A stretch of 63,215 bases of DNA, the filler included, from Octopus bimaculoides (lineage: Eukaryota): assembly GCF_001194135.2 (NCBI RefSeq). It is 7 parts of 6 records of this genome, joined end to end, with 100 filler letters (N's around TTAATTAATTAA, not from the genome) between each part and the next. Parts side by side here need not be neighbours in the genome. Positions count along the whole stretch, not along the records: positions 59,023 to 61,128 come from NW_026390774.1; 6 more parts are not named here. One strand, written 5' to 3'. The translations under genes were made by a program, and so were the position numbers. Positions within the stretch are counted from its first letter, which is position 1. Each line of letters starts with the position of its first letter. The notes under the pieces are model-generated. The model was not told where the DNA came from. It saw only the letters and a program-made list of their open reading frames with translations, and did not search any database. Positions 59,192 through 59,520 of the stretch are shown one piece after another.

Positions 59192-59520
59192 CTGTCGTGT
59201 CCGGGAAGAGTCAGTTTCTTTTAGTGCCTTATAATTTAACACACTCTCCGGTAAAATTTCCACTCATTTACTTATTTATTTTTCTAAAATTTTCGTTGCG
59301 TCTTGCAGCCTCTTCAATTTTTGTTGACTCTGTCCGTTATTCAAGCTTCGTTATTCAAGAACGCAGCATGAATAACGGACAGAGTCAACGTCTATTGAAG
59401 AGGCTGCAAGATGCAACGAAAATTTTGGAAAAATAAATAAGTAAATGAGTGGAAATTTTACCGGTGAGTGTGTTAAATTATAAGGTACTAAAACAGAATG
59501 AATCTCCCCGGACACAACAG
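59192..59520. mobile_element. 329-bp palindromic element with a hammerhead-like motif in each arm
   Basis: Arms of about 150 bp (ctgtcgtgtccggg..cccggacacaacag); each reads TTGAAGA G GCTGC aagay GCAAC GAA AATT T outward. Confidence 0.8.

What the first reader, a model, noticed from the sequence alone, without database searches (positions are those of the whole stretch)
59192..59520. A palindromic 'MITE' carrying two outward-facing hammerhead motifs: candidate ribozyme-bearing foldback element family
Seen: the right arm (59391-59429, +) reads TCTA-TTGAAGA-G-GCTGC aagat GCAAC-GAA-AATT-T-TGGA. That gives stem I (4 pairs, one G.U), a core with U3, stem II (4/5 pairs), GAA and a self-complementary AATT stem III. 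The left arm has the mirror image (59283-59321, -), where the 3' stem I strand is TAGA but the 5' strand is lost. Known: Penelope-like elements carry minimal type I hammerheads with palindromic stem III that act as dimers, and often form inverted terminal arrangements. Inference: this is not a DNA-transposon MITE but an inverted pair of Penelope-type termini, giving a self-cleaving RNA cassette on whichever strand is transcribed. The same pairing of IR element and hammerhead remnant recurs at 1095-1233 and 16571-16808, which suggests a wider family. Caveats: the U3.G8 wobble and UUU cleavage triplet are suboptimal, and I cannot say whether this is already described.
Basis: partly seen in the sequence, partly recalled or inferred. 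Interest (0 to 1): 0.75.

Follow-up and report, generated by a model that had tools for sequence, protein, structure and literature searches.

The report
Decayed Penelope-type inverted repeat with hammerhead relic
A 329-base near-perfect palindrome beside a TA microsatellite carries a hammerhead-ribozyme-like motif on each outward-reading strand; it is most likely an old, dead head-to-head insertion of a Penelope-like retroelement end, a known arrangement, not a working ribozyme.

Summary
Positions 59192-59520 form a palindrome of two 164-nt arms around one base: 89.6% identity, no indels.

The right-arm motif (59391-59429, +) fits a minimal type I hammerhead layout. A motif of this quality is expected 0.004-0.008 times per 61 kb on both strands, and 0.09-0.42 times under the loosest definitions.

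Several features match published PLE insertion behaviour:
- head-to-head geometry
- (TA)n target
- ...AATT junction
- AC-rich 3' end 95 nt past the cleavage site

Ribozyme function is not supported:
- Both copies have U3 opposite G8.
- The left copy has lost helix I.
- No Rfam hammerhead model matches.
- There is no second same-strand copy to form a dimer.
- A read-through transcript would fold into a -234 kcal/mol hairpin.

No other copies could be retrieved, so the family-level tests (consensus, covariation, link to an RT ORF) remain undone. This is a known kind of element and of low interest.

The parts
59192..59355 (-). Left arm, 164 nt. The inferred element sense strand is the minus strand, reading from the centre outward to 59192.
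   Evidence: 89.6% identical to the right arm, substitutions only.
59356..59356 (.). Single central base (C) between the arms. This is the head-to-head junction.
59357..59520 (+). Right arm, 164 nt. The sense strand is the plus strand, and the 3' end ...CCCCGGACACAACAG is AC-rich.
   Evidence: Compared with the AC-rich reverse-transcription start site of PAc in PMC11167929.
59391..59429 (+). Mini-hammerhead-like motif, the better-kept copy. Helix I 59391-59394 / 59426-59429. Core U3-A9 59395-59401. Extra G 59402. Helix II 59403-59408 / 59412-59417. G12-A14 59418-59420. AAUU 59421-59424. U17 59425, with predicted cleavage after it.
   Evidence: Chance estimate.
59283..59321 (-). Mirror copy of the motif. 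The core and helix II are intact. The helix I 5' strand is replaced (AAAA), the helix I 3' strand is TAGA, and the loop II U is changed to C.
   Evidence: It does not pass the descriptor.
59521..59543 (.). (TA)11.5 microsatellite abutting the right end, the presumed insertion target. It is followed by an 862-N assembly gap.
   Evidence: (TA)n target bias of PLEs is described in PMC8557442.
59186..59191 (+). Left junction flank ...CCAATT, ending in ATT immediately before the element.
   Evidence: The PAc endonuclease prefers a 5'-ATT-3' motif in AT-rich DNA (PMC11167929).

Best explanation
This is an old, inactive insertion of the 3'-terminal ~164 nt (pLTR-like part) of a Penelope-like retroelement or a non-autonomous derivative. 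It is laid down as two head-to-head inverted copies in a (TA)n / AT-rich target. Inferred mechanism: the PLE protein nicks both strands of AT-rich DNA. It then primes reverse transcription from an internal AC-rich site of the RNA on both strands, or the first cDNA snaps back and self-primes. Either route gives two 5'-truncated copies whose 3' ends point outward and whose truncated 5' ends meet at a palindromic junction. Each copy carries the element's minimal type I hammerhead about 95 nt from its 3' end. The source RNA already had U3 in the core, since both arms share it. The arms have since diverged by about 10%, and the left copy has lost helix I. What is shown: the palindrome, the motif and its improbability by chance, the hallmarks, the geometry, the flanks, and the energetics. 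What is inferred: PLE origin, double priming or snap-back, and inactivity of the ribozyme.
For: The motif is improbable by chance: 1-2 hits per 30 Mb of random sequence, and it is the only hit in the piece. It has three features that Cervera & de la Pena list as emergent hallmarks of metazoan PLE min-HHRs (PMC4209133): a nucleotide between 9 and 10.1, G10.1-C11.1, and palindromic 15.2-16.2, together with a 4-bp helix I. The same paper reports dual min-HHRs on opposite strands 100-700 bp apart; here the spacing is 108 bp. PLE insertions are typically 5'-truncated with an adjacent inverted 5'-truncated copy, head-to-head, with palindromes at the junction (PMC8557442; PMC3846280). (TA)n target bias with indiscernible TSDs is also described. 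PAc cleaves and extends both DNA strands at AT-rich 5'-ATT-3' sites and starts reverse transcription in an AC-rich stem-loop 85-92 nt downstream of the HHR cut site. Here the left flank ends ...AATT, the right flank is (TA)n, the 3' end is ...GGACACAACAG, and it lies 95 nt past U17. Both motifs read outward, as this model requires. The arms differ only by substitutions (17, no indels), as expected for an aged real duplication.
Against: No RT/GIY-YIG ORF or any other PLE sequence is in the piece. The 95 nt downstream of the motif are closed in all frames, unlike PAc, where this stretch is the start of the ORF. The core fails the published descriptors: UUGAAGA is neither CUGANGA nor UUGANAA. No Rfam hammerhead model matches at E<=10. 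Exactly equal arm lengths and a 1-nt centre are also what a foldback DNA element would show. The distance and ATT comparisons rest on a single reptile element. No other copy of the family could be found to show 5'-truncation series or a common 3' end.
Confidence: 0.55

Rival explanations
1. A non-autonomous DNA transposon of the foldback/MITE type made entirely of long terminal inverted repeats. The hammerhead-like motif would be a coincidence, duplicated automatically by the palindrome.
For: The inverted repeat covers the whole element with a 1-nt centre. The right flank starts with TA. The left flank's TT is one substitution from TA, so a decayed Tc1/mariner-type TA duplication cannot be excluded. 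The two motif copies are not independent evidence because one arm mirrors the other.
Against: No TSD of 2-10 bp is present (left ...TTTACCAATT, right TATATATAT...). The termini 5'-CTGT...ACAG-3' do not resemble the common CAG-type termini of Tc1/mariner or hAT (from my own knowledge; no TIR library was available). The chance of such a motif in 330 nt is about 2e-5 to 2e-3.
Confidence: 0.2
2. One reading: a live ribozyme-bearing foldback family whose RNA self-cleaves on either strand, possibly as a dimer or with protein assistance.
For: The isolated 39-mer's minimum-free-energy structure is exactly helices I and II of the hammerhead. AAAAUUUU can form an intermolecular helix in a homodimer. PLE hammerheads are known to be weak in vitro and protein-assisted (PMC4209133; PMC11167929).
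Against: U3 opposite G8 is present in both copies. C3-G8 is a core base pair whose disruption abolishes cleavage, and natural variants covary to U3-A8. The left copy lacks helix I. No sense-sense tandem partner is present. Occupancy of the hammerhead fold is 0.24 in the 39-mer, 0.02 in a 61-mer, 1e-5 in the arm and 6e-41 in the whole palindrome. The arms have diverged by 10%, which indicates age and no evident constraint. There are no Rfam hits.
Confidence: 0.05
3. The locus matters as a long hairpin RNA (hpRNA, endo-siRNA or miRNA-like source, or ADAR substrate) whatever its origin.
For: The full transcript folds into a ~160-bp hairpin at -233.9 kcal/mol, z = -34. There are sub-threshold Rfam hits to long plant-type miRNA precursors.
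Against: The Rfam hits are generic hairpin matches far below the gathering scores (40.5 vs 90 bits). Any inverted TE pair has this property.
Confidence: 0.1
4. An assembly artefact next to a gap, for example a missed-adapter long read, or a host fold-back duplication at a broken TA repeat.
For: The element sits 23 nt from an 862-N gap. PLE inverted structures are known to trouble assemblies.
Against: The arms differ by 17 substitutions and no indels, including a 4-nt block. Read-error palindromes would differ mainly by indels, or not at all after polishing.
Confidence: 0.05

Closest known systems
Minimal type I hammerheads (min-HHRs) of metazoan Penelope-like elements (Cervera & de la Pena 2014, PMC4209133)
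   Same: Type I layout with an open helix I of 4 bp. An unpaired nucleotide between A9 and 10.1. A G10.1-C11.1 pair. No real helix III, only a palindromic ANNU (here AAUU). Occurrence as two motifs on opposite strands about 100 bp apart. Weak predicted stability.
   Different: Core position 3 is U with G8 retained (neither C3-G8 nor the known U3-A8). Helix II is 5-6 bp with a C.A mismatch rather than 6-8 clean pairs. Association with a PLE ORF or pLTR is not shown.
Inverted pLTR / head-to-head 5'-truncated copy structures of EN+ PLEs (Arkhipova et al. 2013, PMC3846280; Craig et al. 2021, PMC8557442; Frangieh et al. 2024, PMC11167929)
   Same: Head-to-head inverted repeats with a palindromic junction. 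Arm size (164 nt) is near pLTR size (181-218 bp in Adineta vaga). AT-rich / (TA)n target. No clear TSD. AC-rich 3' terminus about 90 nt downstream of the hammerhead site.
   Different: There is nothing between the inverted units, neither ORF nor direct pLTR. Both arms are truncated at the same point. No 30-40-bp 'tail' is recognisable. The region downstream of the hammerhead is non-coding.
Metazoan non-LTR retrozymes (Cervera & de la Pena 2020, PMC7229834; Li et al. 2026 preprint 10.64898/2026.07.22.740005)
   Same: Short (170-400 nt), AT-rich, non-coding units carrying a type I hammerhead and thought to derive from PLE pLTRs.
   Different: Retrozymes are direct tandem arrays with canonical hammerheads that have loop-loop contacts. 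Here there is a single inverted pair with a minimal, core-mutated motif.
Foldback elements / long-TIR MITEs of DNA transposons
   Same: An element consisting almost wholly of two inverted arms. Small size. AT-rich.
   Different: No TSD. Termini unlike the common DDE-family TIR ends. It carries an oriented, outward-reading, retroelement-type RNA motif.

Membership tests
Hammerhead ribozyme (catalytic RNA, type I) | Conserved core C3-U4-G5-A6-N7-G8-A9 ... G12-A13-A14, with position 3 pairing to position 8 (C-G, rarely U-A) | tested here: not met
   Both copies read UUGAAGA, which is U3 with G8. There are no strict CUGANGA...GAAA or UUGANAA...GAAA boxes anywhere in the piece. The other ten core positions match.
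Hammerhead ribozyme (catalytic RNA, type I) | Helices I and II flank the core, with A15.1-U16.1 and a non-G residue at 17 | tested here: met
   Right copy: helix I is 4 bp (one G.U), helix II is 5-6 bp with one C.A, then A15.1, U16.1 and U17. The left copy fails helix I.
Hammerhead ribozyme (catalytic RNA, type I) | Match to a curated covariance model (Rfam Hammerhead_1, _3, _II, HH9, HH10) | tested here: not met
   No hammerhead family at E<=10 in the 2.1-kb piece or in a 71-nt search. The sensitivity of these models to helix-III-less min-HHRs could not be checked.
Hammerhead ribozyme (catalytic RNA, type I) | Self-cleavage at the predicted site; covariation in the helices across family members | not testable with these tools
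   No related copies were retrievable. With only the two arms, there is no compensatory change.
Metazoan PLE min-HHR (Cervera & de la Pena 2014) | Unpaired nucleotide between A9 and 10.1 | tested here: met
   G59402. Only the bulged register pairs helix II.
Metazoan PLE min-HHR (Cervera & de la Pena 2014) | G10.1-C11.1 closing pair | tested here: met
   G59403-C59417.
Metazoan PLE min-HHR (Cervera & de la Pena 2014) | Palindromic 15.2-16.2 / minimal helix III | tested here: met
   AAUU at 59421-59424. Cofolding gives an intermolecular AAAAUUUU helix.
Metazoan PLE min-HHR (Cervera & de la Pena 2014) | Short helix I (4-5 bp) and long helix II (6-8 bp) | tested here: inconclusive
   Helix I is 4 bp. 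Helix II is 5-6 bp including a C.A mismatch.
Metazoan PLE min-HHR (Cervera & de la Pena 2014) | A second same-strand copy nearby (tandem) to allow the dimeric active form | tested here: not met
   The only other copy is on the opposite strand. The right side is lost in an N gap after 23 nt.
Penelope-like element insertion | Head-to-head inverted 5'-truncated copies or inverted pLTRs with a palindrome at the junction | tested here: met
   Two 164-nt arms, 1-nt centre, motifs reading outward. Described in PMC8557442 and PMC3846280.
Penelope-like element insertion | AT-rich / (TA)n target, with TSD absent or indiscernible | tested here: met
   The right flank is (TA)11.5 and the left flank is ...TATATTTACCAATT. 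No TSD is present.
Penelope-like element insertion | 3' end at an internal AC-rich reverse-transcription start about 85-92 nt downstream of the hammerhead site (known for PAc only) | tested here: inconclusive
   The distance is 95 nt and the end is ...GGACACAACAG. This rests on a single comparator from a reptile.
Penelope-like element insertion | Family includes copies with an RT plus GIY-YIG ORF, or is mobilised by one | not testable with these tools
   The piece holds no such ORF. The source genome is not in any searchable collection.
DNA-transposon MITE / Foldback element | Fixed-length target-site duplication flanking terminal inverted repeats | tested here: not met
   No 2-10-bp duplication. 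The immediate flanks are TT and TA. Only 23 nt of right flank exist before the gap.
DNA-transposon MITE / Foldback element | Many copies with identical ends; TIR termini matching an autonomous DDE transposon | not testable with these tools
   No eukaryotic genome or repeat library was available.
miRNA / hairpin RNA gene families (Rfam) | Score at or above the family gathering threshold | tested here: not met
   The best hit is MIR1023 at 40.5 bits against a threshold of 90. These are generic long-hairpin matches.

The most novel reading that the evidence does not exclude
The palindrome is itself the transposing unit of an undescribed non-autonomous PLE-derived 'hairpin' family. Its U3.G8 hammerhead would be a tolerated, protein-assisted core variant, and its transcripts would serve both as template and as a dsRNA source of small RNAs.
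Probability: 0.06. Interest if true: 0.55.

Novelty: new member of a known kind. Interest (0 to 1): 0.2.

Why it matters
If the best explanation holds, this is one more relic of a phenomenon described since 2013-2014: PLE ends inserted head-to-head, carrying minimal hammerheads on opposite strands. It has modest value as a clean small example. Its geometry fits the two-strand nicking and internal reverse-transcription start shown in vitro for an Anolis element, so it hints that those rules hold in a distant host. It also illustrates that such relics are annotated by eye as MITEs and by Rfam as pseudo-miRNA hairpins. It does not open a new question.

Tried and rejected
1. Rfam, all 4227 families, with the permissive E-value threshold, on the piece and on 71 nt around the motif. 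There was no hammerhead hit, only generic hairpin or miRNA hits far below threshold.

2. ARAGORN found no tRNA.

3. Search for family copies:
- Exact 20-26-mers from conserved parts of the arms and from the motif were scanned against metagenome contigs (2 scans), genome contigs (1 scan) and viral contigs (2 scans).
- The only results were two chance matches in bacterial coding DNA, L001 and L002.
- A 26-mer from the neighbouring SINE found nothing in genome contigs.

4. 'ORF trick': the 80-aa open frame through the palindrome and a 64-aa open frame through the SINE were used as protein queries, to find gene calls on other copies and then their contigs. Neither gave a hit. The host genome therefore seems absent from that collection, and I did not spend the third search.

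There is no transcription, read-end or assembly check.

6. Literal sequence strings searched in the paper library returned only unrelated primer matches.

7. The supplement of PMC4209133, which holds the descriptor and alignments, is not held. My descriptor is therefore my own reconstruction.

8. TSD search for 2-10 bp found none.

9. The ORF from the ATG inside loop II (59411) runs 9 codons, and all frames downstream are closed, so there is no coding remnant.

10. Organism identity: the SINE looks like cephalopod tRNA-derived SINEs from memory only. This was not verified and not used.

Full report
WHAT IS THERE

The piece (59023-61128) is eukaryotic-looking DNA. It has imperfect (TG)n blocks, a (TA)11.5 run, an 862-N assembly gap (59544-60405), and a tRNA-like SINE fragment on the minus strand.

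Positions 59192-59520 are a near-perfect palindrome. The repeat finder reports arms 59178-59355 and 59357-59534 at 88% complementarity. Position-by-position comparison shows that the true arms are 164 nt each (59192-59355 and 59357-59520) around C59356. They differ by 17 substitutions and no indels, giving 89.6% identity. The outer 14 nt of the reported repeat are a chance extension into TA-rich flank.

THE HAMMERHEAD-LIKE MOTIF

On the plus strand, 59391-59429 reads as follows:
- helix I 5' strand: UCUA
- core: U3-U4-G5-A6-A7-G8-A9
- one extra G
- helix II: GCUGC(A)-loop-(U)GCAAC, 5-6 bp with one C.A mismatch
- G12-A13-A14
- A15.1-A-U-U16.1
- U17
- helix I 3' strand: UGGA

A descriptor scan finds this and nothing else in the piece. 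No strict CUGANGA...GAAA or UUGANAA...GAAA box pair exists anywhere.

The minus-strand copy (59283-59321) keeps the core and helix II. Its helix I 5' strand is replaced: a 4-nt block reads GTCT in the right arm and AAAA in the left. Its 3' strand, TAGA, would pair perfectly with the right arm's TCTA. The common ancestor therefore probably had a clean 4-bp helix I. This is inference.

IS IT CHANCE?

I scanned two 30-Mb first-order Markov sequences, one trained on the piece and one on the element. The descriptor allowed Y at position 3, 0-1 extra nucleotide, a helix II of 4-8 bp with at most one internal mismatch, a palindromic 15.2/16.2 pair and a helix I of at least 4 bp.
- It hit once and twice, respectively, which is 0.004-0.008 expected per 61.2 kb on both strands, and about 2-4e-5 per 330 nt.
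- Allowing any single core mismatch gave 1 and 6 hits, which is 0.004-0.02 per window.
- The loosest version I could defend allowed helix I of at least 3 bp, no palindrome, a bulge of up to 2 nt and a loop of up to 12 nt. It gave 0.09-0.42 per window.

The descriptor was written after seeing the candidate, so these are rough bounds. Even so, the motif is not what random sequence of this composition readily yields. The two copies are not independent, because the palindrome duplicates whatever one arm holds.

HALLMARKS NOT USED IN THE SELECTION

Cervera & de la Pena (PMC4209133) list features that emerged from their metazoan PLE min-HHR families without being in the descriptor:
- a nucleotide between 9 and 10.1
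- a highly conserved G10.1-C11.1 pair
- palindromic 15.2-16.2
- a short helix I (4-5 bp)

By base composition, the first two features together would accompany a chance match only about 4% of the time; this is my estimate from the element's composition.

The same paper notes dual min-HHRs close together (about 100-700 bp) on opposite strands. Here the centres are 108 bp apart.

THE LOCUS MATCHES PLE INSERTION BEHAVIOUR

Published behaviour of PLE insertions:
- Hammerheads sit near the 3' ends.
- Naiad and Neptune-type elements favour (TA)n targets, where TSDs cannot be discerned (PMC8557442).
- In Adineta vaga, inverted pLTRs of 181-218 bp in head-to-head arrangement, with palindromes at the junction, are common and are read as self-priming (PMC3846280).
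- For the Anolis Poseidon element PAc, the purified protein cleaves and extends both DNA strands. It prefers AT-rich DNA with a 5'-ATT-3' motif.
- PAc starts reverse transcription internally in an AC-rich stem-loop 111-118 nt into the ORF. The hammerhead cut site is 26 nt into the ORF, so insertion ends lie 85-92 nt past the cut site.
- The hammerhead is not needed for insertion in vitro (PMC11167929).

At this locus:
- Both motifs read outward, as two-strand priming or snap-back requires.
- The right flank is (TA)11.5 and the left flank ends ...CCAATT.
- Each arm ends ...CCCCGGACAC(A/G)ACAG.
- The end lies 95 nt past U17 (59425 to 59520).
- There is no TSD of 2-10 bp.

These agreements are individually weak, and the distance and ATT comparison rests on one reptile element.

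WHY IT IS PROBABLY NOT A WORKING RIBOZYME

(a) Both copies have U3 with G8. C3 and G8 pair in the active site. C3G or G8C abolish cleavage, and the double change restores it in part (PMC11167929). Natural variants covary to U3-A8, and most core mutations cause drastic loss of activity (PMC3088659). Because both arms share U3, the source RNA already had it. That is compatible with insertion not needing the ribozyme.

(b) The left copy has no helix I.

(c) No curated Rfam hammerhead model matches at E<=10, even when only 71 nt are searched. I could not measure how well those models see helix-III-less min-HHRs.

(d) Min-HHRs are thought to act as dimers of same-strand copies. Here the only neighbour is antisense.

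(e) Energetics:
- The isolated 39-mer does fold as helices I and II, but at only -3.4 kcal/mol.
- Occupancy of that fold is 0.24 in the 39-mer, 0.02 in a 61-mer, 1e-5 in the 164-nt arm and 6e-41 in the whole palindrome.
- The whole palindrome instead forms a -233.9 kcal/mol hairpin, z = -34.

(f) About 10% divergence between the arms indicates an old insertion. The zero differences across the 27 nt of core, helix II and GAAAAUUUU are only marginally unusual (0.9^27 is about 0.06), and a 37-nt identical run elsewhere shows that such runs occur here without any known motif.

WHAT COULD NOT BE DONE

The decisive family-level tests need the source genome or its reads: copy structure, consensus at position 3, covariation, and a link to an RT/GIY-YIG ORF.
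- The searchable DNA collections are prokaryotic, viral or metagenomic. They returned nothing but two chance bacterial matches.
- Protein searches with open frames through the palindrome and the neighbouring SINE returned nothing.
- The supplement with the published descriptor is not held.

RIVALS

- A foldback or long-TIR MITE with a coincidental motif remains the main rival (about 0.2). The arms are exactly equal, and a decayed TA duplication (TT vs TA) cannot be excluded.
- An active ribozyme cassette is unlikely (about 0.05).
- A role as a hairpin-RNA source is possible for any inverted TE pair but is unsupported (about 0.1).
- An assembly artefact is unlikely, because the arms differ by substitutions only (about 0.05).

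VERDICT

The most likely account (about 0.55) is a decayed head-to-head pair of Penelope-type 3' ends, each carrying a mutated minimal hammerhead. This kind of element is already described, so I class it as a new member of a known kind, of low interest (0.2).

Noticed in passing
window 60406-60696 (minus strand): A SINE-like sequence with a tRNA-like head (GGCGCAATGGCCCAGTGGTTAGGG ... GGTTTCGATTCCCAGACCGGG, with A-box and B-box look), cut off by the N gap. ARAGORN and Rfam tRNA do not call it. Its 64-aa open frame has no protein hits, and a 26-mer from it is absent from genome contigs. From memory it resembles cephalopod tRNA-derived SINEs; this is unverified.
   Followed up: partly
window 59544-60405: An 862-N assembly gap begins 23 nt after the palindrome, directly after the (TA)n run. 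The true right flank is therefore unknown, and a tandem or further PLE copy could be hidden there.
   Followed up: no
window 59088-59137 and 60787-61128: Long, imperfect (TG)n-type microsatellite blocks (59-70% matches) on both sides of the piece. They produce spurious sub-threshold Rfam miRNA hits such as mir-297 and mir-1277.
   Followed up: no
window 59045-59067: A perfect 8-nt tandem repeat, AGTAAAAG x 2.9.
   Followed up: no
window 59167-59433 (+) and 59354-59542 (-): Open frames of 89 and 63 codons run through the palindrome and give near-identical peptides on the two strands, because of the symmetry. There are no homologues, so they are by-products and not genes.
   Followed up: yes
window 59336-59359: Near the centre, GTTATTCAAG occurs twice in direct orientation 14 nt apart. 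The innermost ~25 nt are less symmetric (9 of 12 pairs) than the rest of the arms. This may mark the snap-back or junction region.
   Followed up: no
window 59411-59440: An ATG lies inside loop II / helix II of the right-arm motif, much as the PAc ORF starts at helix II (PMC11167929). Here it opens only 9 codons, and the left arm has ACG at the same place.
   Followed up: partly
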